The translations under genes and the position numbers were made by a program. The notes beneath the pieces were generated by a model. The model searched no databases. It saw only the letters and a program-made list of their open reading frames with translations, and was not told the origin of the DNA. Below, piece by piece: positions 1,155 through 58,292 of a stretch of DNA of 64,000 nucleotides. Numbering within the stretch: position 1 is the first letter of the stretch; each line of letters opens with the position of its first letter. The stretch lies in the IMG/VR virus record IMGVR_UViG_3300031857_000005, positions 124,001-188,000 of that record; one strand, given 5' to 3'.

Positions 1155-1183
1155 ACCATATTTATTTTTAAATAAAAAAAGTT

Positions 1184-1426
1184 ATGGCAATTACAAAAGA
1201 AGAAATTTCAGGAACAACAATCATAAATGAAATACAATCAAGTAATATCAAAAAGACAGTTTATGATACAATCACTAAAAAATTAATGGTGGAGTTTAAT
1301 AATGGAACACAATATGAATATGATGAGGTACCACATCAAACTTATACTCAATTTAGAATGTCAGAATCACAAGGTAAGTTCTTTAGTTCAAAAATAGCAA
1401 AAACTTTCAAATATAAGAAAGTTTAA
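1184..1426 (+). CDS. KTSC domain protein
   Basis: SSNIKKTVYD...LMVEFNNGTQYEYDEVP...SESQGKFF pattern and size are typical of KTSC. Confidence 0.88.
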   Translation: MAITKEEISGTTIINEIQSSNIKKTVYDTITKKLMVEFNNGTQYEYDEVPHQTYTQFRMSESQGKFFSSKIAKTFKYKKV

Positions 1427-1457
1427 ATAAATTAATTAATCATTGTATTTATTATAG

Positions 1458-2192
1458 ATGGATAAACACGATGATATTCTTTCAAGTTTTAAAGTTCAAA
1501 AAGAACTAAACCCTAAAATTTGGGATGGTAAGGGTAGTAACTCTAAAATGAAACCTGATATTAGAGAAAGGTTACTTGAGATTGCGTATGAATTTATTGA
1601 TTTTTTAGGTGTTGATATTGTTGTTACAGATGTGATAATGACAGGTTCTCTTTCTAATTATAATTGGTCAAAATATTCAGATGTTGACTTACATATTGTT
1701 GCGAATTTTAACCAATTCCCAACCAATCAAATTGATTTATATAAAGAATTTTTCAACCTTAAAAAAATTCTTTTCAATGATAATCACGATATAACAATAT
1801 ATGGATATGATGTAGAACTTTATCTTCAGGACGAAGAAGAAACTCATTTTAGTAGTGGAGTATATTCAGTATTGTTTGATGAGTGGGCTAATAATCCTAA
1901 AAAAGAATCTGTTAGTATTGATAAAGAACAAATTAAAAATAAAGCAAAACAATGGATGGATATTATTGATGGTGTTATTAATAATATGAAAGATGAGGAT
2001 ATTGATACTGCAAAAGAATTAATAAAGAAATACAAAGATAAGTTAAAAAAATACAGAACCTGTGGACTGGAAAAAGACGGAGAATACTCAAACGAGAATT
2101 TGGTGTTTAAGATGTTAAGAAGAAATGGGTACATTGAAAAGTTATATAACTTTGGTAATGAATTTTTAGATAAAAAGTTATCTATTAACTAA
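1458..2192 (+). CDS. Pol-beta superfamily nucleotidyltransferase
   Basis: TGSLSNYNWSKYSDVDLH (GS...DxD), third acidic residue in YDVELY. Confidence 0.85.
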   Translation: MDKHDDILSSFKVQKELNPKIWDGKGSNSKMKPDIRERLLEIAYEFIDFLGVDIVVTDVIMTGSLSNYNWSKYSDVDLHIVANFNQFPTNQIDLYKEFFNLKKILFNDNHDITIYGYDVELYLQDEEETHFSSGVYSVLFDEWANNPKKESVSIDKEQIKNKAKQWMDIIDGVINNMKDEDIDTAKELIKKYKDKLKKYRTCGLEKDGEYSNENLVFKMLRRNGYIEKLYNFGNEFLDKKLSIN

Positions 2193-2279
2193 AAAAAAAT
2201 CTCATATTTAATCGTAATGTTAATAAACGATGATTATGATATATTTATATAAAAAAATAATTTTATAAAAAAAAACAAA

Positions 2280-3761
2280 ATGGGAAGTTTAAGACCGATA
2301 GGTAGTGAAAAACTACAAGGAATGGATAAAATTAAGAGAATTATAGAAATTTCTCGTTATAACGAACATATGCCAAATCCTGTTAATGAAAACGAATCAA
2401 AAGAATATTCTCGTTTTCTTGCTGATGGTAATAGATATGAAATAATTAAAGAAAAATCAGGTTACATTATTAAACACCAAATTTCTGAGGGTGTTTCTGA
2501 CTATATTGAACCTATGAAAAATAGAAAATATTATTCATCTTATTCTCAGGCTTTAAAAAGACTGAATTTAATGGCTAAAGAATTAAATACTCTTCACGAA
2601 AATAAAGAAGAGGTTTCATTATTTGGTGAAGAAAAGAAATTTTACCTTAAGAAGAATATGTCAGAAAAATTAAATATGGATCCAAACAGTATGGATGAAC
2701 TTGATGAACAAGCACCTGCACCCGCAGCACCCGCTCCGGCACCTGCAGCACCCGCTCCGGCACCTGTTCCCGCACCTGAAGATGTTCCTGTAGAACCTGA
2801 AGGAGAACTTCCTCCACCATCAGAAGAAGGAATGGAAGATGAGGGCATGGAAGATACTGAAGAAAATGAAGAAGAAGTAACATTCAAATCAATACAAAAA
2901 TTAACAGGAAAATTAGCACAAAAAATTCGTGACTTTGAATCAAATGGAGAAGAAGATGAAGAAGGTATGGATGGGAATGATGTTAAATATGTTATTAACT
3001 CAATATTGTCGTCATTAGACTTAACAACATTAGATGAAGATGATGTTGATGAAATTGTTGCTCGTTTTGAGGGTGATGAAGAAGGAATGCCTGAGGAAGG
3101 TGGTATGGAAACTGAAGAACCTATGGAACCATCACCTGAAGGAGAAGAAGGTGAAGAATTACCTCCACCACCAGCTGAAGGAGAAATGGCTGAAATGCAA
3201 AATTTAGGTGATAAGTTTATGAATAAACTTAAAGGGGCCTATTCGTCATCATTAGGTAAAAAATTACCTGGTATGGATGAAATGTTCGGTGATGGTGATG
3301 ATGAAGAGTTGGGAACTATGAGAGGTCGTTATTTCGGTGACGAAGAAGAAGAGGATGAGTTTGGATTTGATGACGAAATGGGTTTTGAAGATGAAGAAGA
3401 TGATTATACAATGAGAGGTGCAAGAAAACATAGAAGAATGTATGATGATGAAAATCATTTCTCACACGGAACATTTGGAGAATCCAAAGTAGATAATATT
3501 ATTAAAAAATACTTTGAAATTGACAATAAGGAAAAACAATTAAATGAAGAAAAAAGAAGAAGAGAATTAAGAAACCATATTCTTGAAACTAAATCTGAAA
3601 TTAAAAGATTGTCTGAAACAGTTCGTCAAGAAAGAATGGCGGTTAAATTTTTGAGTGAAAATAAAAAAGCAAGTTTAATTGGAATTACAAATAAGAAAAA
3701 TTTGATATTCAAAGTAAACGAAAATCAATTTAGAATTTCACCAAACGGAACGATTATATGA
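2280..3761 (+). CDS. Hypothetical acidic protein with Pro/Ala linker; probable internal head protein
   Basis: ORF track; PAPAAPAPA linker, D/E-rich tracts, upstream TATTTAT motif. Confidence 0.6.
   Translation: MGSLRPIGSEKLQGMDKIKRIIEISRYNEHMPNPVNENESKEYSRFLADGNRYEIIKEKSGYIIKHQISEGVSDYIEPMKNRKYYSSYSQALKRLNLMAKELNTLHENKEEVSLFGEEKKFYLKKNMSEKLNMDPNSMDELDEQAPAPAAPAPAPAAPAPAPVPAPEDVPVEPEGELPPPSEEGMEDEGMEDTEENEEEVTFKSIQKLTGKLAQKIRDFESNGEEDEEGMDGNDVKYVINSILSSLDLTTLDEDDVDEIVARFEGDEEGMPEEGGMETEEPMEPSPEGEEGEELPPPPAEGEMAEMQNLGDKFMNKLKGAYSSSLGKKLPGMDEMFGDGDDEELGTMRGRYFGDEEEEDEFGFDDEMGFEDEEDDYTMRGARKHRRMYDDENHFSHGTFGESKVDNIIKKYFEIDNKEKQLNEEKRRRELRNHILETKSEIKRLSETVRQERMAVKFLSENKKASLIGITNKKNLIFKVNENQFRISPNGTII
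2724..2765 (+). repeat. 21-nt tandem duplication (AAPAPAP x2)
   Basis: gcagcacccgctccggcacct occurs at 2724-2744 and 2745-2765. Confidence 0.9.
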
Positions 3762-4165
3762 ATAAATTAATATACATCAATGGTTTGGGACCAAACTACA
3801 AAGGTGATAATATTTATGAATTTATATTTTCAGATACCTTAGAAGTTTGGGGTGAAAATTGGGAATCAAAACCTGCAAATGGTTACCCACTTCCTCCAGA
3901 TATTGAGTATGTTAAAAAAGTTGGTGTATTAAGGAACGGAGAAATAACATTGGAATTAATTCAGGATTCCGATGTTTTTTCACTTATAGACGCGACTGAC
4001 GATGTTATTGCGTTAGGTTGGGAAAAAGAAACTGAAGAGTTAGATTTCTCAGTAACAAAAAGGTTAGTCTTCAAATTTGGACAAACCGAAGAAGAAGTAA
4101 AAAATAAATTATATGAACGAGATATCGTTCTTGAGTTTGAAAAAAAAGTGGTATATGAGAACTAA
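3758..4165 (+). CDS. Hypothetical protein
   Basis: ORF track; ATGA overlap with upstream gene. Confidence 0.75.
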   Translation: MNKLIYINGLGPNYKGDNIYEFIFSDTLEVWGENWESKPANGYPLPPDIEYVKKVGVLRNGEITLELIQDSDVFSLIDATDDVIALGWEKETEELDFSVTKRLVFKFGQTEEEVKNKLYERDIVLEFEKKVVYEN

Positions 4166-4991
4166 AAACCCTATTACTGTATTGTTGGAAAATGGAATTC
4201 ATTTTTCCACTTTAACAAATATGTCGGAAAAACAAATTAAAGTTTTAGCGGAAAGATTTAAAAAAGAAGAATCTAAAGAGGCGGTAACTAAAACCGTATA
4301 TCAACCATTAAAAAACCCTAAAGATATGGAAGCGGTTCAAAATATGGTAACTAAATCAGATCCTAACGCATCTGTTGAATTGGAAGAAAAATTTGAGTCC
4401 AAAGCACAACAAGGATTATTTTGGGCTAAATGTAATAAATCTAAAGGTAAGGAAAAAAAGAAATGGTGTGATATGGCGAAAGAATTTTCGGACGACACAA
4501 CAAAAAAAGACTATGGAAAAAACCCAAAAAAGAAACATCCTGAAAAAACGGTTGATTATAAAAAGAAGGCTCAAAAAGAAAGTTATGAAAAATTTCTTGA
4601 GGATAGAATCGTTGAGATGGTTTATAACCATGTCAACCCTAAATTAACTAAAGGTGAAATCAAAAAAACAATTCAAGAAAGATCTGAAAGCATGATCTTG
4701 AGGAATCCAAAAAAAATGTCTATGTTCTCTGATGAATCAGGAATAGAAATGAAAAAAATGGATAAACCAATCGGTAAAGTATTTTCAGTGGGTAAATCAC
4801 CAATGGACGAACAAGGAACAAAAGAGAAAGAAAGAACAAAAGAAAAAGAACCTGGAACAAAGAATCCACCAAAAAGAAGAGGTAACCCTTTTAAAAACCC
4901 AAATCCTGGTGTAAAAGAAAGTCCAAGAGGTGGTAATAAAGAGGATGTTAAAATGACTTTTATGGGTCAGATAAAACAAGCGTTAAAATAA
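4155..4991 (+). CDS. Hypothetical basic protein (start probably 4155, MRTKNP)
   Basis: ORF track 4113..4991; the internal ATG overlaps the upstream stop; EKFESKAQQ motif. Confidence 0.7.
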   Translation: MRTKNPITVLLENGIHFSTLTNMSEKQIKVLAERFKKEESKEAVTKTVYQPLKNPKDMEAVQNMVTKSDPNASVELEEKFESKAQQGLFWAKCNKSKGKEKKKWCDMAKEFSDDTTKKDYGKNPKKKHPEKTVDYKKKAQKESYEKFLEDRIVEMVYNHVNPKLTKGEIKKTIQERSESMILRNPKKMSMFSDESGIEMKKMDKPIGKVFSVGKSPMDEQGTKEKERTKEKEPGTKNPPKRRGNPFKNPNPGVKESPRGGNKEDVKMTFMGQIKQALK

Positions 4992-4995
4992 TAAG

Positions 4996-6345
4996 ATGGT
5001 AGATAAAGACTTAGAAAGATTAATCAGGAAAATAATTAAAGAAGCACCAATTGATTATGGTGATTATCCTGAAAGAATGGATCCAAAAACTCAAAGAAGA
5101 ATTGAAGATCCTGAGAACATTTACGCTAAGAACAGAGCTTTTAAAGGTGGTGTTTCTGATGTTGAGAAAATTGCAGGGACAAGATTTAAAGAGATTGTTG
5201 ATTATGTAAAAAGATATTTTAGTACTCAAGAAAACATAACTGACCCTCATGTGATGAGATCTATTATGATGGAACAAATGAGAGCGGTTCAACAATCAAT
5301 GGTTATAGAGTCATCGCATAAAGATGAGTTAAAAGATTTGGCGGTAGAAATTGCGGCGAAAGAAGAAGGATGGATGGATTATTCATTAACTATAAATGAA
5401 GCGATAGAAAATGGTGACATCAGTAAGTCACCAATCCAAGGTGCAGGAACTAGATACGGATTTGAGTTTATTAATGTTGACGCATTTTTAAATGAGAAAA
5501 AAATTAACCCAAGTCAATTCCAAATGAAGGAAAAGGATTTACCTAAATTACAAATTCCTTCAGATTTTTCATTTGATATTGACGAGTTGACACCGGAAGA
5601 ACAAAGACAACTTGAAATTGAAAAGAGGCATGTTATTAACGCATTGATTCAAGGTAAAGGTAAAAGAGGACAATTTTCGTATCAAGCATTTAAAAATAGG
5701 TTAGACGAGATTGATCCAAGATTATATTCATTATACAATAAGATTATGTCTGCAAATGACTTAATGTATTTTACTCAAGAAGATTTGATTGAGATGATGG
5801 GAGGAAATGCCGCTGGTTCATCTGGTGTTGAGAGTGAAGACGAAGATGATGAAGGTGGTGAAGAAGGTGAAGGTATGGATGTTGTAGTAGCAAACGGTAT
5901 AATATTCCCAATTTTATTACACGAATTAATTAAAGGTTTTGGTTCTGTTGCATCAAGAGAACAATGGAGAGGTATGGATCCAGGAATGGCTCAAGATATT
6001 ATGGGTAAGACAGATGTATTTTCTAATGAACCAATGCAATTTAGAGTTGGTGCAGAACTTGTTAGAAAATTAAGAACTTTATTACCTGATGAATTAGTCT
6101 TAGATGAAAGAAGTAAAATTTATATTCCTTTCTTTGAGAGAATTCTTTATGGTATTCCTGCAGATAGATTCTTAAAAGAAATTATGTCAAATGTTGTTTC
6201 TGAAAGAGAAGAAGATAATAATAAAGTAAAACGAACTTTTGAGGACATCCTTAGAAGGGCAAAATCGGACTATCAGAAATATAAAGGTGGTGATAACGAA
6301 GAAGATGAGGAGGATGACGATGCCTTATCAAAATTAGGTTTATAA
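4996..6345 (+). CDS. Hypothetical protein immediately upstream of terminase
   Basis: ORF track, 449 aa; N-terminal KIIKEA motif. Confidence 0.75.
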   Translation: MVDKDLERLIRKIIKEAPIDYGDYPERMDPKTQRRIEDPENIYAKNRAFKGGVSDVEKIAGTRFKEIVDYVKRYFSTQENITDPHVMRSIMMEQMRAVQQSMVIESSHKDELKDLAVEIAAKEEGWMDYSLTINEAIENGDISKSPIQGAGTRYGFEFINVDAFLNEKKINPSQFQMKEKDLPKLQIPSDFSFDIDELTPEEQRQLEIEKRHVINALIQGKGKRGQFSYQAFKNRLDEIDPRLYSLYNKIMSANDLMYFTQEDLIEMMGGNAAGSSGVESEDEDDEGGEEGEGMDVVVANGIIFPILLHELIKGFGSVASREQWRGMDPGMAQDIMGKTDVFSNEPMQFRVGAELVRKLRTLLPDELVLDERSKIYIPFFERILYGIPADRFLKEIMSNVVSEREEDNNKVKRTFEDILRRAKSDYQKYKGGDNEEDEEDDDALSKLGL

Positions 6346-6363
6346 TCTACTTAAATTATTAAT

Positions 6364-6397
6364 AAAACCCCCTTTTATGTAAATAACTGGGGGTTTT
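6364..6397. terminator. Inverted repeat / probable terminator
   Basis: aaaaccccc-N16-gggggtttt. Confidence 0.55.
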
Positions 6398-6420
6398 GAT
6401 ATTTATTGCTAAATGGTTTT

Positions 6421-8184
6421 ATGAGTTTAACTAAAGAACAGGTAATGTTGGAGTATGTAAAATGTATGAAGGATACTCCATACGCATTAAAAACATATTT
6501 ACAAACTTACGACAATACGGTATCACAATATGTCCCATTACAATTATTCCCCGATCAAGTTTCATTATTAAATGATTACGAAAGTTTTAACGAAAATATT
6601 GCATTAAAATATCGTCAAGCGGGTGTATCCACCGTAACTGCGGCATGGGTATCAAAAAAATTAGCGTTCGCAAAGAAAAATAAACCTGAAAAAATTCTAA
6701 TTATTGCCAACAAATTGGACACCTCTTTAGAGATGGCGAATAAGATTAGAGGGTTTGTTGGACAATGGCCGAAATGGGTTGGGATTGATTTTGCCGCAGA
6801 AAAAAATTCACAAAAACACTACAAATTAAATAACGGATGTGAAGTTAAAGCGGTTGCAACATCAAAGGATGCCCTTCGTGGATTTACCCCTACGGTTCTT
6901 ATATTTGATGAGGCGGCGTTTATTGAGGCGGATAGTGATTTTTGGGCGGCTTGTATGGCATCCCTATCTACAGGGGGTAAAGTAATCGTGGTATCAACAC
7001 CGAATGGTTATGATCCAATTTACTATGAAATATATGATCAGGCATTAAGAAATATGAACGACTTTAAAATTACAGAAATGTATTGGTTTAGAGATCCTCG
7101 TTACACAAAAGATTTATACTTGGTTAAAACTGAAGATATTATCCATTATTTGTTAAATAAAGAAGAATATCCTGAAGATAAAATATTAAGTTGGGAAGGT
7201 ATCCCATTTGAAACAAGAAATTATGATGATCTTAAAACAATAATGGATTCAGGTTACAAACCTTGTTCAGATTGGTTTGAAAGAATGGTTAAGAAACTTA
7301 AATATGATAAACGAAAAGTTTCTCAGGAGTTGGAATGTAACTTCCTTGGATCAGGAGATAATGTGTTTGATTCAAAGATGTTACAGACTATTCGTGAAAA
7401 TATGGTTAAAGACCCCCAAAATAAAATGATGGGAAATTCACTATGGATATGGAAGGAACCTATTGTTGGGCACAAATATATTATGGGGGTTGATGTTTCT
7501 CGTGGTGATAGTGAGGATTTTAGTACAATACAAATCATTGATTTTGATGAAAGAGAACAAGTATTGGAATACATTGGAAAAATTCCACCTGATGTATTGG
7601 CAGAAATTGCATATAAATGGGGAAATATGTATTCAGCATATATTGTAATTGATATCACTGGTGGTATGGGAATTGCAACATCAAGAAAATTACAAGAACT
7701 TGGATATAAAAATATGTATGTTGATGGTATTGATTTAAATAATACTTGGAAATACAATCCAAAAGCCCTTGATAAAATTCCTGGCATCAACTTTAATAAC
7801 AAAAGAGTTCAAATAATTGCCGCTTTTGAGGAAGGAATGAGACATAAGTTTAGGATATATAGTTCAAGGTTATATAATGAAATGAATACATTCGTATATG
7901 TGAATGGTAGACCGGATCACCAAAAAGGACATCACGATGATTTAATTATGTCCATATCAATGGCATTATATGTTGGGGAGTCCTCATTCTCAAGTTTAGA
8001 GAAAGTAACTGAACAAACTAAAGCAATGTTAGAATCTTGGACGGTAAATAATAATGAATCAGTTAAAAATGTAATTGATTTTAATCCCGTAATTCCACAT
8101 ATGAATCAAGATAGATTTAGAGATAATTCAAGTATTAGTAGAAAGGATTATGAAAACTATGGTTGGTTATTTGGTATTAGATAA
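6421..8184 (+). CDS. terL: Terminase large subunit (T4 gp17-like)
   Basis: LKYRQAGVST (Walker A region), VLIFDEAAF (Walker B), VVSTPNG (motif III), nuclease GVDVSRG and HHDDLIMS; start moved to MSLTKEQ. Confidence 0.95.
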   Translation: MSLTKEQVMLEYVKCMKDTPYALKTYLQTYDNTVSQYVPLQLFPDQVSLLNDYESFNENIALKYRQAGVSTVTAAWVSKKLAFAKKNKPEKILIIANKLDTSLEMANKIRGFVGQWPKWVGIDFAAEKNSQKHYKLNNGCEVKAVATSKDALRGFTPTVLIFDEAAFIEADSDFWAACMASLSTGGKVIVVSTPNGYDPIYYEIYDQALRNMNDFKITEMYWFRDPRYTKDLYLVKTEDIIHYLLNKEEYPEDKILSWEGIPFETRNYDDLKTIMDSGYKPCSDWFERMVKKLKYDKRKVSQELECNFLGSGDNVFDSKMLQTIRENMVKDPQNKMMGNSLWIWKEPIVGHKYIMGVDVSRGDSEDFSTIQIIDFDEREQVLEYIGKIPPDVLAEIAYKWGNMYSAYIVIDITGGMGIATSRKLQELGYKNMYVDGIDLNNTWKYNPKALDKIPGINFNNKRVQIIAAFEEGMRHKFRIYSSRLYNEMNTFVYVNGRPDHQKGHHDDLIMSISMALYVGESSFSSLEKVTEQTKAMLESWTVNNNESVKNVIDFNPVIPHMNQDRFRDNSSISRKDYENYGWLFGIR

Positions 8185-8204
8185 TATTTATAATAAAATA
8201 TAGT

Positions 8205-8384
8205 ATGGGATTATCAAGTAGAAAAAAATCAGGTAAACTTATTGCTGGCAGTACGATGATAGTACCTGGGCAACCTATTTTGAGTGCAAAAAAATTCGTT
8301 ATAACATTCTCAAATAAAAAAGGTTCTTTACCTGAGACATATAATGAACAATCAACAAGTTCAGGAACCACATCTAACAGTTAA
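8205..8384 (+). CDS. Small hypothetical protein (59 aa), not in ORF track
   Basis: MGLSSRKKSGKLIAGSTMIVPGQPILSAKKF...; fills the terL-portal gap; TATTTAT at 8185-8191. Confidence 0.6.
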   Translation: MGLSSRKKSGKLIAGSTMIVPGQPILSAKKFVITFSNKKGSLPETYNEQSTSSGTTSNS

Positions 8385-8441
8385 TTCTATACTTATAGAT
8401 AAAAGTGATTAAAATTATATAAATAAAATTAAATAGTCAAT

Positions 8442-10268: not shown

Positions 10269-10289
10269 TATTTATAAATAAAAAAGATT

Positions 10290-11006: not shown

Positions 11007-11188
11007 TCGTTCATAAATTTTTGACGATAAATAGCTCTGTTCTTAATTTCTCGTTTTGAGATTGACTTCTTTTTAAATTCTTTTCTACCATTGAGTAGAG
11101 AATTTTGACGAGTCCTAATAACTTTACTTTTTAGTTCTTTAAGGGCTTTCTCTATATCCCCATTTTTATTCACTCTAACTATTAACAT
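11003..11188 (-). CDS. rpsU: Phage-encoded 30S ribosomal protein bS21 (Bacteroidota type)
   Basis: MLIVRVNKNGDIEKALKELKSKV...RKEFKKKS..KRE...RAIYRQ aligns without gaps to Bacteroidota bS21 as recalled (MLII..K.GENIDRALK..K.KF...F.KPS..R...KA.Y). Confidence 0.88.
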   Translation of the reverse strand: MLIVRVNKNGDIEKALKELKSKVIRTRQNSLLNGRKEFKKKSISKREIKNRAIYRQKFMND

Positions 11189-11228
11189 TATAATTTTTTA
11201 TTGGTTTATTGGTATTTGATATATATCA

Positions 11229-11236: not shown

Positions 11237-11279
11237 CTTATTTTTTTGGAAAATAAACGCGATAGTATGAGAAACATCT

Positions 11280-11747: not shown

Positions 11748-11770
11748 TATTTATATAGAAAACTTTTGAT

Positions 11771-12499: not shown

Positions 12500-12505
12500 A
12501 AATTT

Positions 12506-12741: not shown

Positions 12742-12770
12742 AAGGATGGACAAATGTTCATCCTTTTTTT
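12742..12770 (+). terminator. Intrinsic terminator
   Basis: aaggatggaca-aa-tgttcatcctt followed by a T-run. Confidence 0.7.
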
Positions 12771-12864
12771 ATGCTCAAAATTTAATTTTTTTTATCTAAA
12801 AATAGTATTAAACTGATTTTTTTGAAAATGTCAAGTATTTATCTGTAAAACTATTCAAAAAATA

Positions 12865-16199: not shown

Positions 16200-16230
16200 A
16201 AAGGAGACAAGAAATTGTCTCCTTTTTTTA
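16200..16230 (+). terminator. Intrinsic terminator after MCP
   Basis: aaaggagacaa-gaaa-ttgtctccttt plus a T-run. Confidence 0.85.
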
Positions 16231-16273
16231 TTTATGATAATTTATAATGAGTTATATTTATATAAAAAAGATT

Positions 16274-17632: not shown

Positions 17633-17670
17633 ATTGTTTGATATTTATAATAATAGACAAGTTTGTTAAA

Positions 17671-21021: not shown

Positions 21022-21053
21022 TTTTGTTTTTTATTTATAAATATCACATTATT

Positions 21054-24562: not shown

Positions 24563-24583
24563 TTATACTTTTTAATATAAATA

Positions 24584-28633: not shown

Positions 28634-28653
28634 AACAATAAATACTTAAATTT

Positions 28654-29400
28654 TTATTTTAACATTTCTTGAATTAATTGAAAATAGATTTTGCGGTATC
28701 TTTTAATTGATGATCTAATTTCTTTAGTTGTCAAATTTGTCATCTCCCTCAATTCAAATAAGATAACATTTTTATTAAATTTATTGTTTGATGTATCAAG
28801 AAATATGTCATTATAATTTTCAAACATATCGTATAACGCTTGTCCTAATTTTAATTCTTGTTCGGACATTTGTTTATCAGATAAAGTATCTAATAATTTA
28901 TCTAAAAATTTTTTAATAATATCTTCAGTGGTTATACTATAATCATCAATATGATATATCATATCTGGACTATGTTGTAAATCAGATGAAATATCTTCGT
29001 AAGAAATTTTTCTATTCATTTCTTTTTGGTCTTTCATGATTTGTCCCATCAAGTAATTTTTACATATGGTACCAAAATATGAATACGCCTTTTTTTCTTT
29101 TGATGGTTTAAATTTATCAATTTTAGTCATCAAAAATGAATGAGTATCTATATGGACTTCCTCAAAGTTCATATCTTTTCTGTACAATTTATATCTTCTA
29201 ATGATTGAAGATATCATCTTGTCTAAAGGAAGTTTTAAAAACTCATTATATATTTTATTTTTTTCTTCGAAAGTGTCTGCGGTTAGATACATTCTAACCG
29301 CATTTTCCTCTCTTTCGTCAAAATAATTATTAAGTTTTGGTTTTCTACCTTTCTTTTTTACTTCATCTAATGTGTTTGAATTTTTTTCATTATCATTCAT
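28654..29400 (-). CDS. Putative phage sigma factor (gp55/sigma70 region 2-like)
   Basis: DTHSFLMTKIDKFKPSKEKKAYSYFGTICKNYL resembles the region-2 'FDPEK...F.YF..I..N' segment of gp55-like late sigmas. Confidence 0.55.
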   Translation of the reverse strand: MNDNEKNSNTLDEVKKKGRKPKLNNYFDEREENAVRMYLTADTFEEKNKIYNEFLKLPLDKMISSIIRRYKLYRKDMNFEEVHIDTHSFLMTKIDKFKPSKEKKAYSYFGTICKNYLMGQIMKDQKEMNRKISYEDISSDLQHSPDMIYHIDDYSITTEDIIKKFLDKLLDTLSDKQMSEQELKLGQALYDMFENYNDIFLDTSNNKFNKNVILFELREMTNLTTKEIRSSIKRYRKIYFQLIQEMLK

Positions 29401-45244: not shown

Positions 45245-45247
45245 AAA

Positions 45248-46465: not shown

Positions 46466-46523
46466 AAATTAGTTATATAATAATCCAATTATAATCATTA
46501 ATTTATGATATATCAATAAATAA

Positions 46524-48347: not shown

Positions 48348-49326
48348 CTGTTTTGAGTATTTTGATTAAATTGTTTATACTTATCCCTTCTTTTTCCGCA
48401 ATCTTTTTAATTGATTGTAAATTCCTTGTTAATATTTTATTAACTGGTGTATCGTCAATTTCGGAATCTTTCTTAACAACATCTCCTGATTTATTTTTTT
48501 TATTAAGAATAATTTCGTCAATCATCCTCACCATTTTTTCTTTTTCAATTTCTGATAATCTTTTTTTAGTAAAACAATTTTTACATTCACCTTGTTTTTT
48601 TTCTCGTTTTAATTGTTTGTCTAAACTCTTATCAAATCCAAATACCTTACATCTTTCATCTCTCTCAAATAAATCTTCAATACCCAACTTTTCCATAGTT
48701 TCCATACATTCTTTATATGTCTTATCATTTTTGGTTTCTTCATCACCAAACGCGCCAGACATATCTATTTCATCAAGTATATTTTCGTCATCATTTTCAA
48801 TTGATTCACCATAATAAACTCTATAACCACGAACAACAGGATTGTTTGTTTGTCTTGTTGTTATCACAGTTTGATCCATTGTTTTTCTTGGATGCATTCC
48901 TTGATCTAACATTGGTATATTTGAACCTGCAAAAGTACCGTCAGAAGCAACAAACTCAGTCATTTCACCATCAGTTTCTTCATCTTTGTTTTCTTTGTAT
49001 TTTTCAGGAATTTTAGTGTTTAATTTCATTCCTAATTTTTGTCCAAGTTTAATAATGAATGGAGTTGCAATTGTACTTCCTGGTATAATTTGTAATGCAA
49101 TTAACGGTATTAATTTTAATAAATCGGCAGATTGATCTTTAATGAATTCCTTTTCATCTTTAGGTAATTCAAAATCTTTATTTTTTAAATATTCTTTTGC
49201 TGAAGACATAAGAATTTTAACAAGGACTCTTGTTTGTTTTGCCTCATTAGATGCAACTTCTTTGTATTTCTTCAAATCAGAATATACTTTGTCTACAGTT
49301 TTATTTTTTGCCTCTTTAAAAGTCAT
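48340..49326 (-). CDS. Hypothetical protein with N-terminal hydrophobic hairpin
   Basis: ORF track; LLKLIPLIALQIIPGSTIATPFII. Confidence 0.7.
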   Translation of the reverse strand: MTFKEAKNKTVDKVYSDLKKYKEVASNEAKQTRVLVKILMSSAKEYLKNKDFELPKDEKEFIKDQSADLLKLIPLIALQIIPGSTIATPFIIKLGQKLGMKLNTKIPEKYKENKDEETDGEMTEFVASDGTFAGSNIPMLDQGMHPRKTMDQTVITTRQTNNPVVRGYRVYYGESIENDDENILDEIDMSGAFGDEETKNDKTYKECMETMEKLGIEDLFERDERCKVFGFDKSLDKQLKREKKQGECKNCFTKKRLSEIEKEKMVRMIDEIILNKKNKSGDVVKKDSEIDDTPVNKILTRNLQSIKKIAEKEGISINNLIKILKTGE

Positions 49327-49340
49327 AGGTATTTTTTACA

Positions 49341-49367
49341 ATAAATACTTTGATTTGTGGTATTTAT
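49341..49367. promoter_or_regulatory. Back-to-back pair of TATTTAT late-promoter-like motifs at a divergence point
   Basis: ATAAATA at 49341-49347 (14 nt before minus-strand start 49326) and TATTTAT at 49361-49367 (11 nt before plus-strand start 49379). Confidence 0.7.
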
Positions 49368-49378
49368 TTAGAAAAAAG

Positions 49379-51598
49379 ATGGCACAACAAAATATTAATC
49401 AATATGTATATTCTAAATTACGACTTAACATCGTAAATGAGTGTCAAGATATGTCTTTGGCGTCTGATGAGGTAAATTACAACCAAGAAGTTGTATTTTC
49501 ACCATTTCTTATTGCCCAAACATATGGAAATAAGTTACCAATAAACATAGATATATCGGATACGGATACCGTTCAAAATTTGAATTTATTCTATAAAGAT
49601 TATAATTTCAATAATATTTTTGTTTCTCAAAATTATTATAACCCTGAAAATAAAGATTTGTTATGTTTTTCATCATCAACAGCTTGTGATATAGGATTAA
49701 CGGGAATTGATAATGGGTTGGTAACATCAATGAATGGTGAAGAAATAAATTTCACAAATGGTTTATACGATAACTCATTAAAATTTGAAAGATTATATTT
49801 TGATAGAAGATTTAAGATGTTTCAAACTACTGGATATACTACTGATAATGTTAGATTTTCAGGTATAACCGACAGAACATTGTATGAAGTTGTTAGTAAG
49901 AATGGTCCAACAGGAAAATATCACGAACTATATGGGGGGTTCTATCAAGGATTTTATAGATTGTTTGGTTATGATTATAATATTTTTCCTGAAAGGATGA
50001 ATAAAGGATGGTCGGTTGAGATGTTGTTAAAACCGAGATTGATAGATGAATATTTTCCAAGTACAGGAGAAACTACTCTTAATGAAATTTATCCTGAAAA
50101 TGCTGAAATATTCTTTTATTTTGGTACAAGAGCTGAAAATAAATTTTATCACCACGCAGATGGTTCCCCAAATTGTTTTCCTGAATATAACAGAGTTACA
50201 AATGGGTTAGAAGAATGTGTGCAGACTTGTGCTTGTTGTAATCAACAAATCACAAATAGTAGATGTATATATGTTTACCCACCAAGATCAGAAAATAATC
50301 AACACGATCCTCATTTAAATTATGGATGTGATTTATGTAATGGAAATAAAGATAAAAAATTAACTTGTGGTTGTGACTGTGGTAAACAAGCTTGTGATTT
50401 GTGTGGGTGGGAATGTTTTACTCATCAGTGTGAAAACATAATTACGCCAACACCAACGCCAACACCTGATCCAACACCGACTCCTGATTGTAATAACCCC
50501 ATACCTGTCTGTACTCCAACTTGTACAACTTGCGATACTTGTGACGAATGTGAGAATTGCCCATCAACAGGATTTACTTCAGTTGAGAACACTTGCGAAT
50601 CTAATCCTTTATTTGACTCAATGTCGAATGCGATAGCAATTAAATTATGTGGTAGTAAAAACAATCCTCAAATTGGTGTTAAAATATTTAGATGGACTGG
50701 TAATTGTGAAACCACAGGAACTTGTGTTACAGGACAAACTTATGTTACGGGTTATACAATAGATGAATATTGTTCTCCTGATGGAATATATGATTATTGT
50801 GAAATAGTTAATCCTTTATATTTGTTAGAGGAACATTGGTTCCAAGTAGATGTTGTATGGGAAAGATATACTTGGTTAGATATATGTGATTTATGGTGGA
50901 GAGGTGGTCTTGGGGACATTACCAAATTTGAATACTTAGATTCGTTGGCTAACGATACTACAAAATTAATTAAACCCCCAATTACTCGTGGAACAGAAAT
51001 TGCGGAGAAAATAGAACTTGTTAATTTGGATCAATCTTGGTTAGATGACACCCAATTAAGAATGGGGAGATTAAAAATTTATGTTAATGGAAAAATATTC
51101 TTCAAAATAGAAAATATTGAGGAGATAATACCAAGAGCATTAAGTACGGATAAAGAAAGACAGTTAGGAGTTCCATTTAATATTTCTTGGGGTGGTGGAA
51201 CACAAGGATTAAGGGAAAATTTAACATTCTCGGCTTGTACTGCACTTGACGGAAAATATATACAAGACCCCGAATGTTTCTCAACAGAGTTATTAAACAC
51301 AACATCTTTAGCAGGATTACAAACAAATATATTATTGGAACAAAATTTTGCGGGGACTTTTGAGGGTGGTATATCACAATTTAGAATGTATGTAGAACCT
51401 TTATCGGCACCTGAAGTAAAACATAACTTCTTATTACTTAAAGATACTTTTGATATGTTAAACCCTGATTGTCCTGATTGTAGTACAATTGTTTGTTTAC
51501 CAAATGATTTCACATATGTTTTAGTTGAGTTGGATTTCTTAGTAACTCAAGATTTTTTCTACATTAGAACACAGAATAATGATTATTTCATAGTCTGA
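49379..51598 (+). CDS. Large structural protein with Cys-rich insert and (PT)n linker (start probably 49379)
   Basis: ORF track start 49142 overlaps the opposite gene; MAQQNINQY start has motif upstream; CACC, CGCDCG, PTPTPTPDPTPTP, CTTCDTCDECENC. Confidence 0.7.
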   Translation: MAQQNINQYVYSKLRLNIVNECQDMSLASDEVNYNQEVVFSPFLIAQTYGNKLPINIDISDTDTVQNLNLFYKDYNFNNIFVSQNYYNPENKDLLCFSSSTACDIGLTGIDNGLVTSMNGEEINFTNGLYDNSLKFERLYFDRRFKMFQTTGYTTDNVRFSGITDRTLYEVVSKNGPTGKYHELYGGFYQGFYRLFGYDYNIFPERMNKGWSVEMLLKPRLIDEYFPSTGETTLNEIYPENAEIFFYFGTRAENKFYHHADGSPNCFPEYNRVTNGLEECVQTCACCNQQITNSRCIYVYPPRSENNQHDPHLNYGCDLCNGNKDKKLTCGCDCGKQACDLCGWECFTHQCENIITPTPTPTPDPTPTPDCNNPIPVCTPTCTTCDTCDECENCPSTGFTSVENTCESNPLFDSMSNAIAIKLCGSKNNPQIGVKIFRWTGNCETTGTCVTGQTYVTGYTIDEYCSPDGIYDYCEIVNPLYLLEEHWFQVDVVWERYTWLDICDLWWRGGLGDITKFEYLDSLANDTTKLIKPPITRGTEIAEKIELVNLDQSWLDDTQLRMGRLKIYVNGKIFFKIENIEEIIPRALSTDKERQLGVPFNISWGGGTQGLRENLTFSACTALDGKYIQDPECFSTELLNTTSLAGLQTNILLEQNFAGTFEGGISQFRMYVEPLSAPEVKHNFLLLKDTFDMLNPDCPDCSTIVCLPNDFTYVLVELDFLVTQDFFYIRTQNNDYFIV

Positions 51599-51618
51599 AA
51601 TATTTATAGTAAAAAAAC

Positions 51619-56201: not shown

Positions 56202-57023
56202 ATGGTACAAAAAATTTTTTTTAACGCATCACTACCGAGAGCAGGATCAACATTACTGCAAAATATTCTAATGCAAAATCCTGATATTTATTCCACACCA
56301 ACTTCTGGTGTTATAGAATTATTATCAACCGCAAGAACATTATATTCTAATGGAGATGCGTTTAAGGCTCAAGATTCTGAAACTATGAAATCAGGATTTA
56401 AAAATTTTTGTAACAAAGGTTTTTTTGGGTTTTATGATGGTGTTACTAATAGACCTTATGTTATGGAAAAAAGTAGAGGTTGGCTTGGATACCAAGATTT
56501 TGTTGAATTTTTTATGGATGAAAAACCTAAAATAATTTGTATGGTTCGTGATTTGAGATCAATATTTTCATCAATGGAAAAAAATTATAGAAAAAATCCT
56601 GATAAAGATCCAAACATTGTTAATACTGTTGAATTAAAAAATATGACAACAACATCAAGGATAGATCATTACTCAATTTCTCCCCCAATCGGACCATCAT
56701 TAGAATGGTTATCGGAGACATTCCAAAGAAAACAAAATAAAGATATACTTTTTATCCGATTTGAGGATTTAACATCAAATCCTGATACTGAACTTAAAAA
56801 GATTTACAACTATTTAGAATTACCTTACTACCAACATGATTTTAATAATGTACAACAACTTACATTTGAGAATGATATAATCCATGGGATTTTTGGTGAT
56901 CACCAAATTAAATCTCAGGTAAAACCTGTTAAAGATGATTACGTTGATATATTAAGTCAAGAAAATTGTGATAGATTAAGACAACATTATGATTGGTTTT
57001 TTAGGACATTTAACTATTTATAA
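56202..57023 (+). CDS. PAPS-dependent sulfotransferase
   Basis: 5'-PSB loop SLPRAGSTLL; EKSR; 3'-PB MVRDLRSIFSS; IRFEDL..P...L.KIY.YL. Confidence 0.85.
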   Translation: MVQKIFFNASLPRAGSTLLQNILMQNPDIYSTPTSGVIELLSTARTLYSNGDAFKAQDSETMKSGFKNFCNKGFFGFYDGVTNRPYVMEKSRGWLGYQDFVEFFMDEKPKIICMVRDLRSIFSSMEKNYRKNPDKDPNIVNTVELKNMTTTSRIDHYSISPPIGPSLEWLSETFQRKQNKDILFIRFEDLTSNPDTELKKIYNYLELPYYQHDFNNVQQLTFENDIIHGIFGDHQIKSQVKPVKDDYVDILSQENCDRLRQHYDWFFRTFNYL

Positions 57024-57050
57024 TATATAAAAAATTAAAAATATAATAAA

Positions 57051-57293
57051 ATGGAAGAAAATATAACACAAGAGCAAATCCAAAACAGTATCAACGCCGC
57101 GTTTGACTCCGTTAATTTAATAAATCAAATGTTAACGTCAGAAAAAACTGATGAAAACAAAAATACTGTAAAAAGAAATTTTGAACATTTGGAAATAATG
57201 TTATCAAAAGATTGGTTTTTAACAAATTTAACTGAACAACAAAAAACGGATATTGATTCTTCAATTGAAGATGGTAAATTGTTTATTTTGTAA
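57051..57293 (+). CDS. Small hypothetical protein (tail-fibre-associated?)
   Basis: ORF track, 80 aa. Confidence 0.7.
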   Translation: MEENITQEQIQNSINAAFDSVNLINQMLTSEKTDENKNTVKRNFEHLEIMLSKDWFLTNLTEQQKTDIDSSIEDGKLFIL

Positions 57294-57316
57294 TACTATA
57301 AATTATATTTTTTCTT

Positions 57317-58195
57317 ATGGAAGAAAAATATTTGGTTTGGCACATTGAGGGTGGTTTAGGTAAAAATATTGCGGCAACGGCATTATTAAATTCATTAAAA
57401 GAAAAATACAATGATAGAAAAATTGTTGTAGTTGCATCTTATCCCGAAATATTTTTAAACTTACCATCGGTATATAGGGTATACAAATTAGGTTCTACTC
57501 AGTATTTTTATGATGATTATATTAAAGATAAAGATACTATAGTTTTTAAACATGAACCATATTATGAAACACAACATATATTGAAACAAAAACATTTGAT
57601 TTCAAATTGGTGTAACATAATGGGAATAGATTATAATTTTCAATTACCAACTTTAAATTTTAATTTTGTTCAACAAAGGAATGTACTTTCATGGGAAAGA
57701 AGTAAACCTATTTTGGTGATTCAAACAAATGGAGGACATCTTCAGAGTAATCAATCTTATTCTTGGACAAGAGATTTGCCTTATATGATAACTTCTCAAA
57801 TTGCAGAAAAATATAAAGAGACTCATCACATCATACAAGTATGTAAACCAAATTCAATAAAATTACCAAACGCAGAAATTATTGATTATCAAATTCAATC
57901 AATGGATTTGTTTGGATTACTTATTGCAAGTGATAAAAGAATTCTAATTGATTCTTGTTTGCAACACGCATCCGCCGCACTTAATTTACCATCTACTGTG
58001 TTTTGGATTGGTACGTCACCTAAAAACTTTGGTTATTCATTACATAATAATATTATTGCTAATCAACCAACCGATACCACAAAATTAATTGATGGTTATC
58101 TTTTTGACTATTCTTTTGACGGAATAAGTCACGAATGTCCTTATTATAGTTTGGAAGAAATGTTTGACATACCAAATATCTTGGAAAAGATATAA
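57317..58195 (+). CDS. GT9/heptosyltransferase-like glycosyltransferase (GT-B)
   Basis: HIEGGLGKNIAAT, ILVIQTNGG, LIDSCLQHASAALNLPSTVFW. Confidence 0.68.
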   Translation: MEEKYLVWHIEGGLGKNIAATALLNSLKEKYNDRKIVVVASYPEIFLNLPSVYRVYKLGSTQYFYDDYIKDKDTIVFKHEPYYETQHILKQKHLISNWCNIMGIDYNFQLPTLNFNFVQQRNVLSWERSKPILVIQTNGGHLQSNQSYSWTRDLPYMITSQIAEKYKETHHIIQVCKPNSIKLPNAEIIDYQIQSMDLFGLLIASDKRILIDSCLQHASAALNLPSTVFWIGTSPKNFGYSLHNNIIANQPTDTTKLIDGYLFDYSFDGISHECPYYSLEEMFDIPNILEKI

Positions 58196-58292
58196 CCCGT
58201 TAAAAATCATTTTTTTATTTACTTTTTAAAATTAATTTCTGTATCTATCAGACAATTCTCTATTGGATAGATATTTATTGTAAAAACTAATA

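What the first reader, a model, noticed from the sequence alone, without database searches (positions are those of the whole stretch)
1159..58278. TATTTAT late-promoter-like motif (reverse complement of the T4 late box) before at least 17 genes on both strands
Seen in sequence: TATTTAT on the coding strand at 1159, 1446, 2242, 6400, 8185, 10269, 11748, 12836, 16255, 17642, 49361, 51601 and 58272 (+), and at 21037, 24577, 28638 and 49341 (-). Most lie 11-22 nt before the ATG, nearly all upstream of head, baseplate or fibre genes. Orientation follows the gene strand, including the back-to-back pair at 49341/49361. Established knowledge: T4 gp55 recognises TATAAATA. Inference: this lineage uses a distinct late promoter whose core is the inverse of the T4 box, with very short 5' UTRs. 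Caveat: the genome is AT-rich, so single hits are weak evidence.
Basis: partly seen in the sequence, partly recalled or inferred. Interest (0 to 1): 0.66.

Follow-up and report, generated by a model that had tools for sequence, protein, structure and literature searches.

The report
Phage promoter box TATTTAT, T4-late type
A short DNA word, TATTTAT, sits just upstream of about a quarter of this giant freshwater T4-like phage's genes and is conserved in its relatives; it is most likely the phage's own promoter signal, a two-letter variant of the phage T4 late promoter, read by a distant relative of the T4 late sigma factor encoded in the same window.

Summary
All 17 coordinates exist. In the window, 19 sense copies lie within 45 nt upstream of 63 genes, against 2.75 +/- 1.6 in shuffles. 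In the whole 304-kb phage genome the figures are 102 against 18.9 (z=20), and TATTTAT is the top upstream 7-mer. The word is strand-specific (75 against 13). It is conserved gene by gene in 80 related contigs. It is also the top upstream 7-mer in two cultured relatives, Flavobacterium phage immuto and Microcystis phage Mel-JY01.

The spacing to the ATG has two peaks, 4-6 nt and 12-16 nt. An A-rich stretch 4-6 nt downstream of the word marks the likely transcription start. This predicts leaderless mRNAs for the first peak and roughly 6-12-nt leaders for the second. In Mel-JY01 the box lies 30-40 nt upstream with a Shine-Dalgarno sequence in between, so it is a transcription signal, not a translation signal.

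ORF 28654-29400(-) is a remote gp55 homologue (best structural match to T4 gp55, Z 11.2; profile E 3.6e-4).

"Inverse of the T4 box" is a misleading description: in the same orientation TATTTATA differs from TATAAATA only at positions -10 and -9. That these promoters fire late is inferred, not shown. Verdict: a new variant of a known kind.

The parts
1159..1165 (+). TATTTAT box, 18 nt before ATG 1184 (80-aa ORF); follows a hairpin plus T-run at 1130-1158
1446..1452 (+). TATTTAT box, 5 nt before ATG 1458 (244 aa, phrog_36119); leaderless-type spacing
2242..2248 (+). TATTTAT box, 31 nt before ATG 2280 (493 aa)
6400..6406 (+). TATTTAT box right after a terminator hairpin, 14 nt before ATG 6421 of the large terminase; terminator+box conserved in several relatives
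8185..8191 (+). TATTTAT box abutting the TerL stop codon, 13 nt before ATG 8205 of an unlisted 59-aa ORF upstream of the portal gene
10269..10275 (+). TATTTAT box abutting the portal stop codon (TGA), 14 nt before ATG 10290; present in 36 of 36 orthologous loci
11748..11754 (+). TATTTAT box 16 nt before ATG 11771 of the head maturation protease (phrog_207); present in 47 of 48 orthologous loci
12742..12765 (+). Intrinsic-terminator-like hairpin plus T-run that closes the unit upstream of the 12836 box
12836..12842 (+). TATTTAT box 22 nt before ATG 12865; heads the two-gene unit 12865-14265 + major capsid protein 14300-16177. Present in 36 of 39 orthologous loci; the capsid gene itself has no box (4 of 79)
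16200..16225 (+). Strong terminator hairpin after the capsid gene; its T-run runs into the 16229 box
16229..16235 (+).
16255..16261 (+). TATTTAT box with AAA at +11..+13, 12 nt before ATG 16274 (signal-peptide-like N-terminus)
17642..17648 (+). TATTTAT box in a short divergent intergenic region, 22 nt before ATG 17671. Present in 33 of 35 orthologous loci, where the spacing switches between 5-6, 15 and 22 nt
21037..21043 (-). TATTTAT box (palindromic TATTTATAAATA) 15 nt before ATG 21021 of gene 20386-21021
24577..24583 (-). TATTTAT box abutting an upstream TGA stop, 14 nt before ATG 24562 of gene 23093-24562; present in 26 of 26 orthologous loci
28638..28644 (-). TATTTAT box 4 nt before ATG 28633 (122 aa); leaderless-type spacing; directly downstream of the gp55-like gene
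28654..29400 (-). 248-aa remote homologue of the T4 late sigma factor gp55: sigma-2 domain at residues 25-125 plus a C-terminal helical domain of possible sigma-4 type. Candidate reader of the box
46516..46522 (-). It is the only box on the 18-kb minus-strand glycan-gene block that ends with the gp55-like gene
49341..49347 (-). TATTTAT box 14 nt before ATG 49326; back to back with the 49361 box, 13 nt between the two cores
49361..49367 (+). TATTTAT box 11 nt before ATG 49379 (true start of the 49142-51598 frame)
51601..51607 (+). TATTTAT box 11 nt before ATG 51619 (1513-aa virion/tail-spike-like protein)
57015..57021 (+).
58272..58278 (+). TATTTAT box 14 nt before ATG 58293 (959 aa)

Best explanation
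TATTTAT is the core of a phage-specific promoter. The full form is a-TATTTAT-a/t, then three variable bases, then AAA. It is a -10-type box that works without a -35 element, like the T4 late promoter TATAAATA, from which TATTTATA differs only at positions -10 and -9 in the same orientation.

I propose that host RNA polymerase core is directed to it by the gp55-like sigma factor encoded at 28654-29400(-). Transcription would start at an A 4-6 nt downstream of the heptamer. Where the ATG lies 4-6 nt from the box, the mRNA would be leaderless. Where it lies 12-16 nt away, the leader would be about 6-12 nt, A-rich and without a Shine-Dalgarno sequence, as fits a Bacteroidota host.

The boxes head transcription units for terminase, prohead protease, scaffold plus capsid, tail and fibre genes on either strand. 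They often follow a terminator hairpin directly or abut the previous stop codon.

Shown: enrichment, strand bias, gene-specific conservation, the shift in spacing with host type, and the gp55 homology. Inferred: the start site, which sigma reads the box, and the late timing.
For: 1. Enrichment. TATTTAT is the top 7-mer in -45..-1 of 413 ORFs: 102 against 18.9 +/- 4.1 in local dinucleotide shuffles. ATATTTAT: 72 against 7.4. Window alone: 19 against 2.75.
2. Strand. 75 sense against 13 antisense in co-directional intergenic DNA.
3. Positive control. The same pipeline on T4 76-125 kb returns ATAAATA/TATAAAT as the top words at similar strength (z 18.9).
4. Conservation. In 80 related loci (capsid protein 76-89% identical) there are 401 sense copies before 993 genes. 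Presence is gene-specific. Orthologues of 10290, 11771, 12865, 17671 and 23093 carry it in 36/36, 47/48, 36/39, 33/35 and 26/26 loci. Orthologues of the capsid gene, 11280, 12506, 19431 and 19912 carry it in 4/79, 2/42, 1/54, 0/30 and 0/32. The heptamer is invariant while the flanks diverge.
5. Unit structure. Only 2 of 141 genes with a gap under 12 nt have the box, against 39-48% of genes with larger gaps. 32 of 96 sites have a run of five or more T within 25 nt upstream. Terminators flank the unit 12836-16225. Contigs from two freshwater metatranscriptomes cover only 12972-16155 of the stretch 11500-17400, while a DNA run covers all of it.
6. No -35. No position from -30 to -3 exceeds 0.35 bit, apart from the G at -2 (0.65 bit in the 13-17-nt class), which largely reflects abutting TGA stop codons. 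The back-to-back pair at 49341/49361 leaves no room for a -35 element.
7. Start-site signature. A at +13 in 95% of sites with 12-16-nt spacing and 88% of sites with 17-24-nt spacing. In the 4-6-nt class the A of the ATG falls at +11..+13.
8. Transcription, not translation. In Mel-JY01 the same box lies 30-40 nt upstream, with GGAG-type ribosome sites between box and ATG. In Flavobacterium phage immuto it lies 14-17 nt upstream, before the portal and virion structural protein genes, further upstream of the terminase and tail sheath genes.
9. Sigma factor.
- Profile A2 finds T4 gp55 (7d7c_F) as the best PDB hit: E 3.6e-4, covering gp55 residues 3-153.
- hhalign gives E 6e-5.
- An exhaustive structure search puts gp55 (7d7d_F) first, with Z 11.2 and 2.3 A over 96 residues, followed by sigma-2 domains.
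- Homologues exist in immuto and Mel-JY01. Both lack any RpoD-like sigma yet have the box.
10. Recognition. Shi et al. 2021 (PMC7892883) show that gp55 flips A-12, A-9 and A-8 into pockets. In the T4 register this box keeps A-12 and A-8. Y97 of the -12 pocket is invariant here (Y108). The -9 pocket residues N13 and H95 are replaced, by D/T28 and Y/F106.
Against: - No transcript 5' end has been mapped. The RNA evidence is from assembled contigs only, which cannot show starts.
- Late timing is unproven. About half the sites lie in the 1-124 kb part, which is rich in small non-structural genes.
- A tight spacing to the ATG is unusual for promoters and would also suit an RNA-level signal.
- The register relative to the T4 box is ambiguous. 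If the start is at +12, ATATTTAT occupies -13..-6 and every position differs from T4.
- The gp55 homology is remote (19% identity).
- T99 of gp55 is not conserved.
- The T4 clamp-binding tail is absent, and no gp45-type clamp was found.
- The gp55-like gene has no recognisable host-type promoter of its own.
Confidence: 0.68

Rival explanations
1. The box is a promoter but is read by another sigma factor: the host primary sigma or the phage's RpoD-like sigma (genome 280552-281352). It would then be a general phage promoter, not a late one.
For: About 100 sites, many before small non-structural genes in the 40-124 kb part. The genome encodes a full RpoD-like sigma (PF04542 E 2e-18; phrog_351 E 4.5e-53). 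Nothing here ties the gp55-like protein to the box biochemically.
Against: The host-type Bacteroidota pattern TTTG-N17-21-TAnnTTTG is a separate motif in this genome: 42 against 21.7 +/- 5 expected, clustered at 8-50 kb and 280-295 kb. The box has no -33 TTTG. Immuto and Mel-JY01 have the box and the gp55-like gene but no Sigma70_r2 protein. The same box is used in a phage reported on a cyanobacterium and in phages of Bacteroidota, so it follows the phage, not the host sigma.
Confidence: 0.17
2. The word acts in RNA, not DNA: a translation-initiation enhancer replacing the Shine-Dalgarno sequence in a Bacteroidota host, or an endonuclease processing site between cistrons.
For: Narrow spacing to the ATG (4-6 or 12-16 nt). 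The 4-6-nt class sits where a ribosome-binding site would. 22 of 96 boxes abut the preceding stop codon. AU-rich words are typical RNase E-type targets (general knowledge).
Against: In Mel-JY01 the box is 30-40 nt upstream and a normal GGAG site lies between it and the ATG. Only about a quarter of genes have it, and 139 of 141 tightly packed genes do without it. It follows terminators directly and occurs in short divergent regions where no upstream transcript is expected. Orthologues switch between the two spacing classes. A bimodal spacing 10 nt apart does not fit one ribosome contact. No Rfam family matches.
Confidence: 0.1
3. Chance occurrences of an AT-rich word in AT-rich intergenic DNA.
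For: The genome is 31% GC and intergenic DNA is 25% GC. The total count in the window is not above expectation (53 against 60).
Against: z=20-25 against dinucleotide shuffles of the upstream stretches themselves. 75:13 strand bias. Gene-specific conservation across 80 loci and two cultured phages.
Confidence: 0.01

Closest known systems
Phage T4 late promoter (TATAAATA at -13..-6) read by gp55, with gp33 and the gp45 sliding clamp
   Same: An 8-bp A/T box with no -35 element, on either strand, before virion genes. Similar density: about 50 sites in 169 kb for T4 (PMC2988020) against about 100 in 304 kb here. A gp55 homologue is encoded. 6 of 8 box positions are identical in the same orientation. 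The same k-mer pipeline recovers both boxes at similar strength.
   Different: Positions -10 and -9 are T, not A. There is an added A at -14 and a conserved AAA at the presumed start. Leaders are about 6-12 nt or absent, against 14-28 nt between box and ATG with a Shine-Dalgarno sequence in T4. The sigma is 248 aa with an extra C-terminal helical domain and lacks the T4 clamp-binding tail. No gp45-type clamp was detected.
Variant late-promoter consensus of other T4-related phages (KVP40, 44RR and S-PM2 like T4; Aeh1 with a/gC at -13/-12), as reviewed in PMC2988020
   Same: Lineage-specific drift of the gp55 box within the T4 superfamily, found in silico.
   Different: The known variants change -13/-12. 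This one changes the central -10/-9, including one of the three bases that T4 gp55 flips into pockets. I found no paper describing TATTTAT as a phage promoter.
Bacteroidota primary-sigma promoter (-33 TTTG / -7 TAnnTTTG)
   Same: T-rich -10-region element; host phylum inferred from a T9SS CHU_C/SprB protein.
   Different: Different word, and no -33 partner. The host-type pattern occurs separately in this genome at other genes.
Leaderless-mRNA promoters, with the -10 element a few nt upstream of the start codon, common in Actinobacteria, Deinococcus and archaea (general knowledge)
   Same: A box 4-6 nt before the ATG implies transcription starting at the A of the ATG. 30 genes here and 55 unique sites in relatives have this spacing.
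   Different: Here the same box also serves a second class with a fixed short leader, and orthologues switch between the classes. Leaderless initiation is not shown for this host.

Membership tests
T4-type late transcription (gp55-dependent promoter) | Consensus box TATAAATA | tested here: not met
   The box is TATTTAT(A). TATAAATA in sense upstream: 23 against 8.1 expected, and 9 of the 23 exist only as part of the palindrome TATTTATAAATA.
T4-type late transcription (gp55-dependent promoter) | Single -10-type box, no conserved -35 element | tested here: met
   No position from -30 to -3 exceeds 0.35 bit; the G at -2 (0.65 bit in the 13-17-nt class) largely reflects abutting TGA stop codons. 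Boxes abut coding sequence or a divergent box.
T4-type late transcription (gp55-dependent promoter) | Box about one helical turn upstream of a mapped transcription start | not testable with these tools
   Only assembled RNA contigs were available. The start at +11..+13 is inferred from conserved A residues and ATG placement.
T4-type late transcription (gp55-dependent promoter) | Sites on either strand before virion (late) genes | tested here: met
   Before TerL, protease, the scaffold+capsid unit, a tail-spike-like protein and the sheath, on both strands. Also before many non-structural genes.
T4-type late transcription (gp55-dependent promoter) | Phage encodes a gp55 homologue | tested here: met
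   7d7c_F gp55 is the top PDB sequence hit, E 3.6e-4. hhalign E 6e-5, probability 65%. 7d7d_F is the top structural hit, Z 11.2. phrog_234 E 1.5e-4.
T4-type late transcription (gp55-dependent promoter) | gp45 sliding clamp as activator, with a clamp-binding hydrophobic tail on gp55 | tested here: not met
   phrog_223 and PF02916 find nothing in the genome. This is weak evidence, because a divergent clamp could be missed. The T4 tail SLDFLYEAND has no counterpart at the C-terminus of the 248-aa protein or of its homologues.
T4-type late transcription (gp55-dependent promoter) | gp33 co-activator | not tested
   No search was made. The C-terminal domain (residues 155-248) weakly resembles sigma region 4 (Z 5.1 to 2h27_D) and might take over the beta-flap contact.
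T4-type late transcription (gp55-dependent promoter) | Activity late in infection, coupled to replication | not testable with these tools
   No time-resolved data.
Bacteroidota sigma-A promoter | -7 TAnnTTTG with -33 TTTG | tested here: not met
   The box does not fit TAnnTTTG, and no TTTG is conserved upstream. The host-type pattern occurs at other places.
E. coli-type sigma-70 promoter | TTGACA-N16-18-TATAAT | tested here: not met
   95 found against 102 +/- 10 in shuffles over window 1-20000. TATAAT is not enriched upstream: 44 against 47.5.
Ribosome-binding / translation signal | Fixed distance to the start codon in all carriers, and present at most genes | tested here: not met
   Bimodal spacing. 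30-40 nt in Mel-JY01, with a separate GGAG site. Absent from about 75% of genes.

The most novel reading that the evidence does not exclude
This widespread freshwater clade of T4-like phages has rewired T4-type late transcription. Its gp55 homologue has changed specificity at the centre of the box (-10/-9, with altered -9 pocket residues). It has gained a sigma-4-like domain that replaces gp33 and sliding-clamp coupling. It starts transcription at, or about 6-12 nt before, the start codon, so that a large share of phage mRNAs in a Bacteroidota host are leaderless.
Probability: 0.25. Interest if true: 0.72.

Novelty: new variant of a known kind. Interest (0 to 1): 0.56.

Why it matters
It gives a concrete, testable promoter grammar for a very abundant but almost unstudied group of freshwater jumbo phages. 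More than 598 related capsid loci turned up in IMG/VR, and more than 7,900 homologues of the sigma factor in protein databases. It also covers cultured relatives, so experiments are possible.

It offers a natural specificity switch for studying how gp55-type minimal sigma factors read single-stranded -10 DNA. Two central bases of the box are changed and the -9 pocket residues are replaced.

It predicts large-scale use of leaderless and ultra-short-leader mRNAs in phages of Bacteroidota, a phylum whose translation initiation without Shine-Dalgarno pairing is still being worked out.

In practice, the box improves start-codon and operon calling in these genomes. Five start codons in this window were corrected with it.

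Tried and rejected
- **Whole-window count.** Not enriched, so only position and strand carry the signal.
- **T4 consensus TATAAATA as the real box.** Weak: 23 against 8.1, and 9 of the 23 are palindrome by-products.
- **E. coli-type sigma-70 scan.** No enrichment.
- **Direct Pfam and PHROG scans of the 248-aa protein.** Nothing. A first profile of close homologues gave only E 0.16 to gp55 and hhalign probability 5.5%. Homology became clear only after adding the immuto, Mel-JY01 and LR756508 homologues and with the exhaustive structure search. Foldseek alone gave only weak sigma-factor hits, E 0.04 and above.
- **Depletion of the word inside coding sequence.** 55 against 110 by codon permutation, but it is not specific, because other AT-rich words are depleted as well. 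Inconclusive.
- **gp45 clamp searches.** Blank.
- **Host-type promoter in front of the gp55-like gene.** None found.
- **LR756508.** It has a gp55-like gene but no TATTTAT enrichment in 41 kb around its capsid gene. Its ORF calls may be affected by an in-frame TAG.
- **Literature.** No paper links TATTTAT to phage promoters, and there is no promoter analysis for immuto or Mel-JY01.
- **Rfam and tRNA scans of the window.** Empty.
- **RNA evidence.** They show where RNA-library contigs lie, not starts.

Full report
**What the window is.** The window is bases 124001-188000 of a 304,365-bp IMG/VR virus record of 31% GC. It is a distant T4-like phage.
- It has a gp23-type capsid protein (14300-16177), a T4-type portal (8442-10268), a large terminase (6421-8184) and a head maturation protease (11771-12499).
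- The nearest annotated capsid relatives are only 41-43% identical: an uncultured 484-kb phage (LR756508), Microcystis phage Mel-JY01 and Flavobacterium phage immuto.
- A protein with a T9SS CHU_C sorting domain and SprB repeats points to a Bacteroidota host.
- The DNA is found in many lake-water runs.

**Check of the observation.** All 17 coordinates carry TATTTAT.
- The plain count in the window is not enriched: 53 against 60.4 +/- 7.2. The claim therefore rests on position and strand.
- With start codons corrected by inspection, 19 sense copies lie within 45 nt upstream of 63 genes. Dinucleotide shuffles of those same stretches give 2.75 +/- 1.64, with a maximum of 10 in 1000.
- In the whole genome TATTTAT is the single most enriched upstream 7-mer: 102 sense copies against 18.9 +/- 4.1, z=20. 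ATATTTAT is the top 8-mer: 72 of its 131 oriented copies in the genome lie in these stretches, z=25.
- In intergenic DNA between genes on the same strand, sense outnumbers antisense 75 to 13 once the palindrome TATTTATAAATA is set aside.
- As a positive control, the same script on T4 76-125 kb gives ATAAATA and TATAAAT as the top words with z 18.9 and 13.0. The signal here is therefore of the strength of a proven promoter set.

**Anatomy.**
- The base before the heptamer is A in about 85% of sites, and the base after it is A or T.
- In sites 12-24 nt from the ATG, positions +11 to +13 (counting the first T as 0) are A in 68-95% of sites, with +13 highest.
- No position from -30 to -3 exceeds 0.35 bit, apart from the G at -2 (0.65 bit in the 13-17-nt class). 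That G comes largely from TGA stop codons that directly abut the box: 14 of 96 sites have TGA there. There is therefore no -35 partner.
- The distance from the heptamer to the ATG has two peaks: 4-6 nt (30 genes) and 14-16 nt (30 genes) in this genome. Among 358 unique sites in relatives the peaks are at 4-5 nt and 12-16 nt, with a tail to 23.
- In the short class the A of the ATG falls on +11..+13, the same place as the conserved A run of the long class.
- My reading, which is an inference: transcription starts there. That gives leaderless mRNAs in the short class and A-rich leaders of about 6-12 nt in the long class.

**Conservation.**
- A capsid search found at least 598 related loci in IMG/VR. 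The best 80 (76-89% identity, 1.0 Mb) hold 401 sense copies in the upstream stretches of 993 genes.
- Presence is gene-specific and stable:

| Orthologues of | Loci with the box |
|---|---|
| 10290 | 36/36 |
| 11771 (protease) | 47/48 |
| 12865 | 36/39 |
| 17671 | 33/35 |
| 23093 | 26/26 |
| capsid gene (14300) | 4/79 |
| 11280 | 2/42 |
| 12506 | 1/54 |
| 19431 | 0/30 |
| 19912 | 0/32 |

- In the stacks the heptamer is invariant while the flanks change. Orthologues of one gene (17671) switch between spacings of 5-6, 15 and 22 nt. The two spacing classes are therefore not fixed properties of genes.
- The word is also the top upstream 7-mer around the capsid genes of two cultured phages: immuto (10 copies before 42 genes) and Mel-JY01 (8 before 30). 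It is not enriched in LR756508.

**Promoter or RNA signal.** Several results favour a DNA-level transcription signal.
1. In Mel-JY01, whose genes have GGAG-type ribosome sites, the box sits 30-40 nt upstream and the ribosome site lies between it and the ATG. In immuto and here, where there is no Shine-Dalgarno sequence, it sits 4-17 nt upstream. The distance thus follows the host's way of starting translation, while the word stays the same.
2. Only 2 of 141 genes that follow their neighbour by less than 12 nt have it, against 39-48% of genes after larger gaps.
3. A third of sites (32 of 96) have a run of five or more T within 25 nt upstream, many of them the tail of a terminator hairpin. In the window, hairpins at 12742-12765 and 16200-16225 bracket a unit that begins with the 12836 box.
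4. Contigs of two freshwater metatranscriptomes cover only 12972-16155 of the stretch 11500-17400, whereas a lake DNA run covers every bin. This fits that unit, but contigs cannot show ends, and DNA carry-over is not excluded.
5. The pair at 49341/49361 is back to back with 13 nt between the cores.
6. No Rfam family matches the window.

**The sigma factor.**
- It is nevertheless the only place in the genome hit by the gp55 family phrog_234 (E 1.5e-4) and a weak hit for Sigma70_r2.
- It belongs to a large, highly conserved family: more than 7,900 hits, the best 120 all 75% or more identical.
- A profile of the family finds full-length homologues in immuto (E 4.8e-17), LR756508 and Mel-JY01.
- With these added, T4 gp55 becomes the best sequence match in the PDB (7d7c_F, E 3.6e-4, gp55 residues 3-153). 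hhalign gives E 6e-5 over 147 columns.
- An AlphaFold model (mean pLDDT 68) has T4 gp55 as its best match in an exhaustive structure search (7d7d_F, Z 11.2, 2.3 A over 96 residues). Many sigma-2 domains follow. The C-terminal domain (155-248) weakly resembles sigma region 4 (Z 5.1).
- The genome also has a true RpoD-like sigma at 280552-281352. Immuto and Mel-JY01 have the box and the gp55-like gene but no Sigma70_r2 protein.

**Relation to the T4 box.**
Sigma factors read the non-template strand, so a reverse complement would mean nothing mechanistically.
- Written in the same orientation, TATTTATA and TATAAATA agree at 6 of 8 positions and differ at -10 and -9.
- In the gp55 open complex, A-12, A-9 and A-8 are flipped into pockets. 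Y97 stacks on A-12, N13 and H95 line the -9 pocket, and T99 bonds A-8 (PMC7892883).
- In the hhalign alignment Y97, F86, R57 and L54 correspond to Y108, F97, R69 and I66. N13, H95 and T99 correspond to D28, Y106 and G110.
- A kept -12 pocket and a changed -9 pocket fit the box. This rests on a remote alignment and on an assumed register. If transcription starts at +12 rather than +13, ATATTTAT fills -13..-6 and no position matches T4.

**Is it late?** This is not shown.
- For: the box precedes terminase, protease, the scaffold-capsid unit, sheath and fibre-like genes on both strands. Its density (about 100 sites in 304 kb) resembles T4's 50 late sites in 169 kb.
- Against an exclusive late role: about half the sites lie at 1-124 kb, before small genes and a PAS/GAF histidine kinase.
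- A separate host-type pattern, TTTG-N17-21-TAnnTTTG, occurs 42 times against 21.7 +/- 5 expected. It is concentrated at 8-50 kb and 280-295 kb and is a plausible early class.
- The short-spacing class is commoner at 1-124 kb (23 against 9) and the long-spacing class at 124-304 kb (26 against 16). Both occur in both parts.

**Differences from T4 beyond the box.** No gp45-type clamp was detected by two models. The T4 clamp-binding tail of gp55 is absent. The immuto group is known to swap its replicative polymerases (PMC11348598). Clamp-coupled activation, the hallmark of T4 late transcription, may therefore not apply here.

**Verdict.** This is a new variant of a known kind: a T4-type, -35-less phage promoter with an altered centre, an extended start region and very short or absent leaders, paired with a divergent gp55. 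I found no description of it in the searchable literature.

Noticed in passing
genome G000:C1 8478-49713, 279966-281403, 295232-295262; in the window 19399-19429(-) and 24850-24881(-): Host-type Bacteroidota promoter pattern TTTG-N17-21-TAnnTTTG: 42 copies against 21.7 +/- 5.0 in Markov simulations. 17 lie within 120 nt upstream of a gene in sense. They cluster at 8-50 kb and 280-295 kb, and one heads the unit holding the RpoD-like sigma gene. A plausible early promoter class, distinct from TATTTAT.
   Followed up: partly
genome G000:C1 280552-281352 (+), outside the window: A second, canonical RpoD-like sigma factor of 266 aa (Sigma70_r2 E 2e-18; phrog_351 E 4.5e-53). Absent from immuto and Mel-JY01.
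   Followed up: partly
window 28654-46465 (-): An 18-kb one-strand block of about 18 genes at 25-28% GC that encodes glycan synthesis: GDP-mannose 4,6-dehydratase (33846-34820), an epimerase (32945-33856), family-2 glycosyltransferases (42541-43935, 29400-30242) and an FkbM-type methyltransferase (34824-35762). It has a single TATTTAT at its head (46516), and the gp55-like gene is its last gene.
   Followed up: partly
genome G000:C1 75066-77393 and 77515-79638: A T9SS-sorted protein (CHU_C, SprB repeat, PKD) that indicates a Bacteroidota host. Next to it lies a PAS/GAF histidine kinase of 707 aa, an unusual phage gene, with a TATTTAT box 4 nt before its ATG.
   Followed up: no
genome G000:C1 59979, 61135, 63770, 65884, 70516: Near-identical cassettes of terminator hairpin, T-run, TATTTAT, 4-9 nt (5 nt in three of the five) and ATG before small genes; they look like duplicated units.
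   Followed up: no
window 16229-16261: Two TATTTAT boxes in tandem, 26 nt apart, right after the capsid terminator. The second gives a 12-nt spacing to ATG 16274, so the first in-frame ATG at 16247 is probably not the start.
   Followed up: yes
window 8418-8425, upstream of the portal ATG at 8442: In this phage the portal gene has a perfect T4-type TATAAATA 16 nt before its ATG, whereas 17 of 31 orthologous loci have TATTTAT within 45 nt upstream of theirs. A 59-aa ORF with its own TATTTAT box (8185) lies between the terminase and portal genes.
   Followed up: partly
L103 (LR756508 98809-102462): The gp55-like frame of this 484-kb uncultured phage carries an in-frame TAG. This could be a recoded stop or a separate upstream ORF. 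This genome lacks the TATTTAT enrichment.
   Followed up: no
window 14300-16177: The capsid protein is 625 aa, and the Pfam Gp23 model matches best at residues 362-610, so the N-terminal half is divergent or extended. Freshwater metatranscriptome contigs cover it heavily.
   Followed up: no
whole genome G000: No gp45-type sliding clamp found by phrog_223 or PF02916. Other unusual genes include a glutamine-synthetase-like gene at 650-1855, a 1190-aa tail sheath at 210682-214254 and a 2319-aa ORF at 224129-231088.
   Followed up: no
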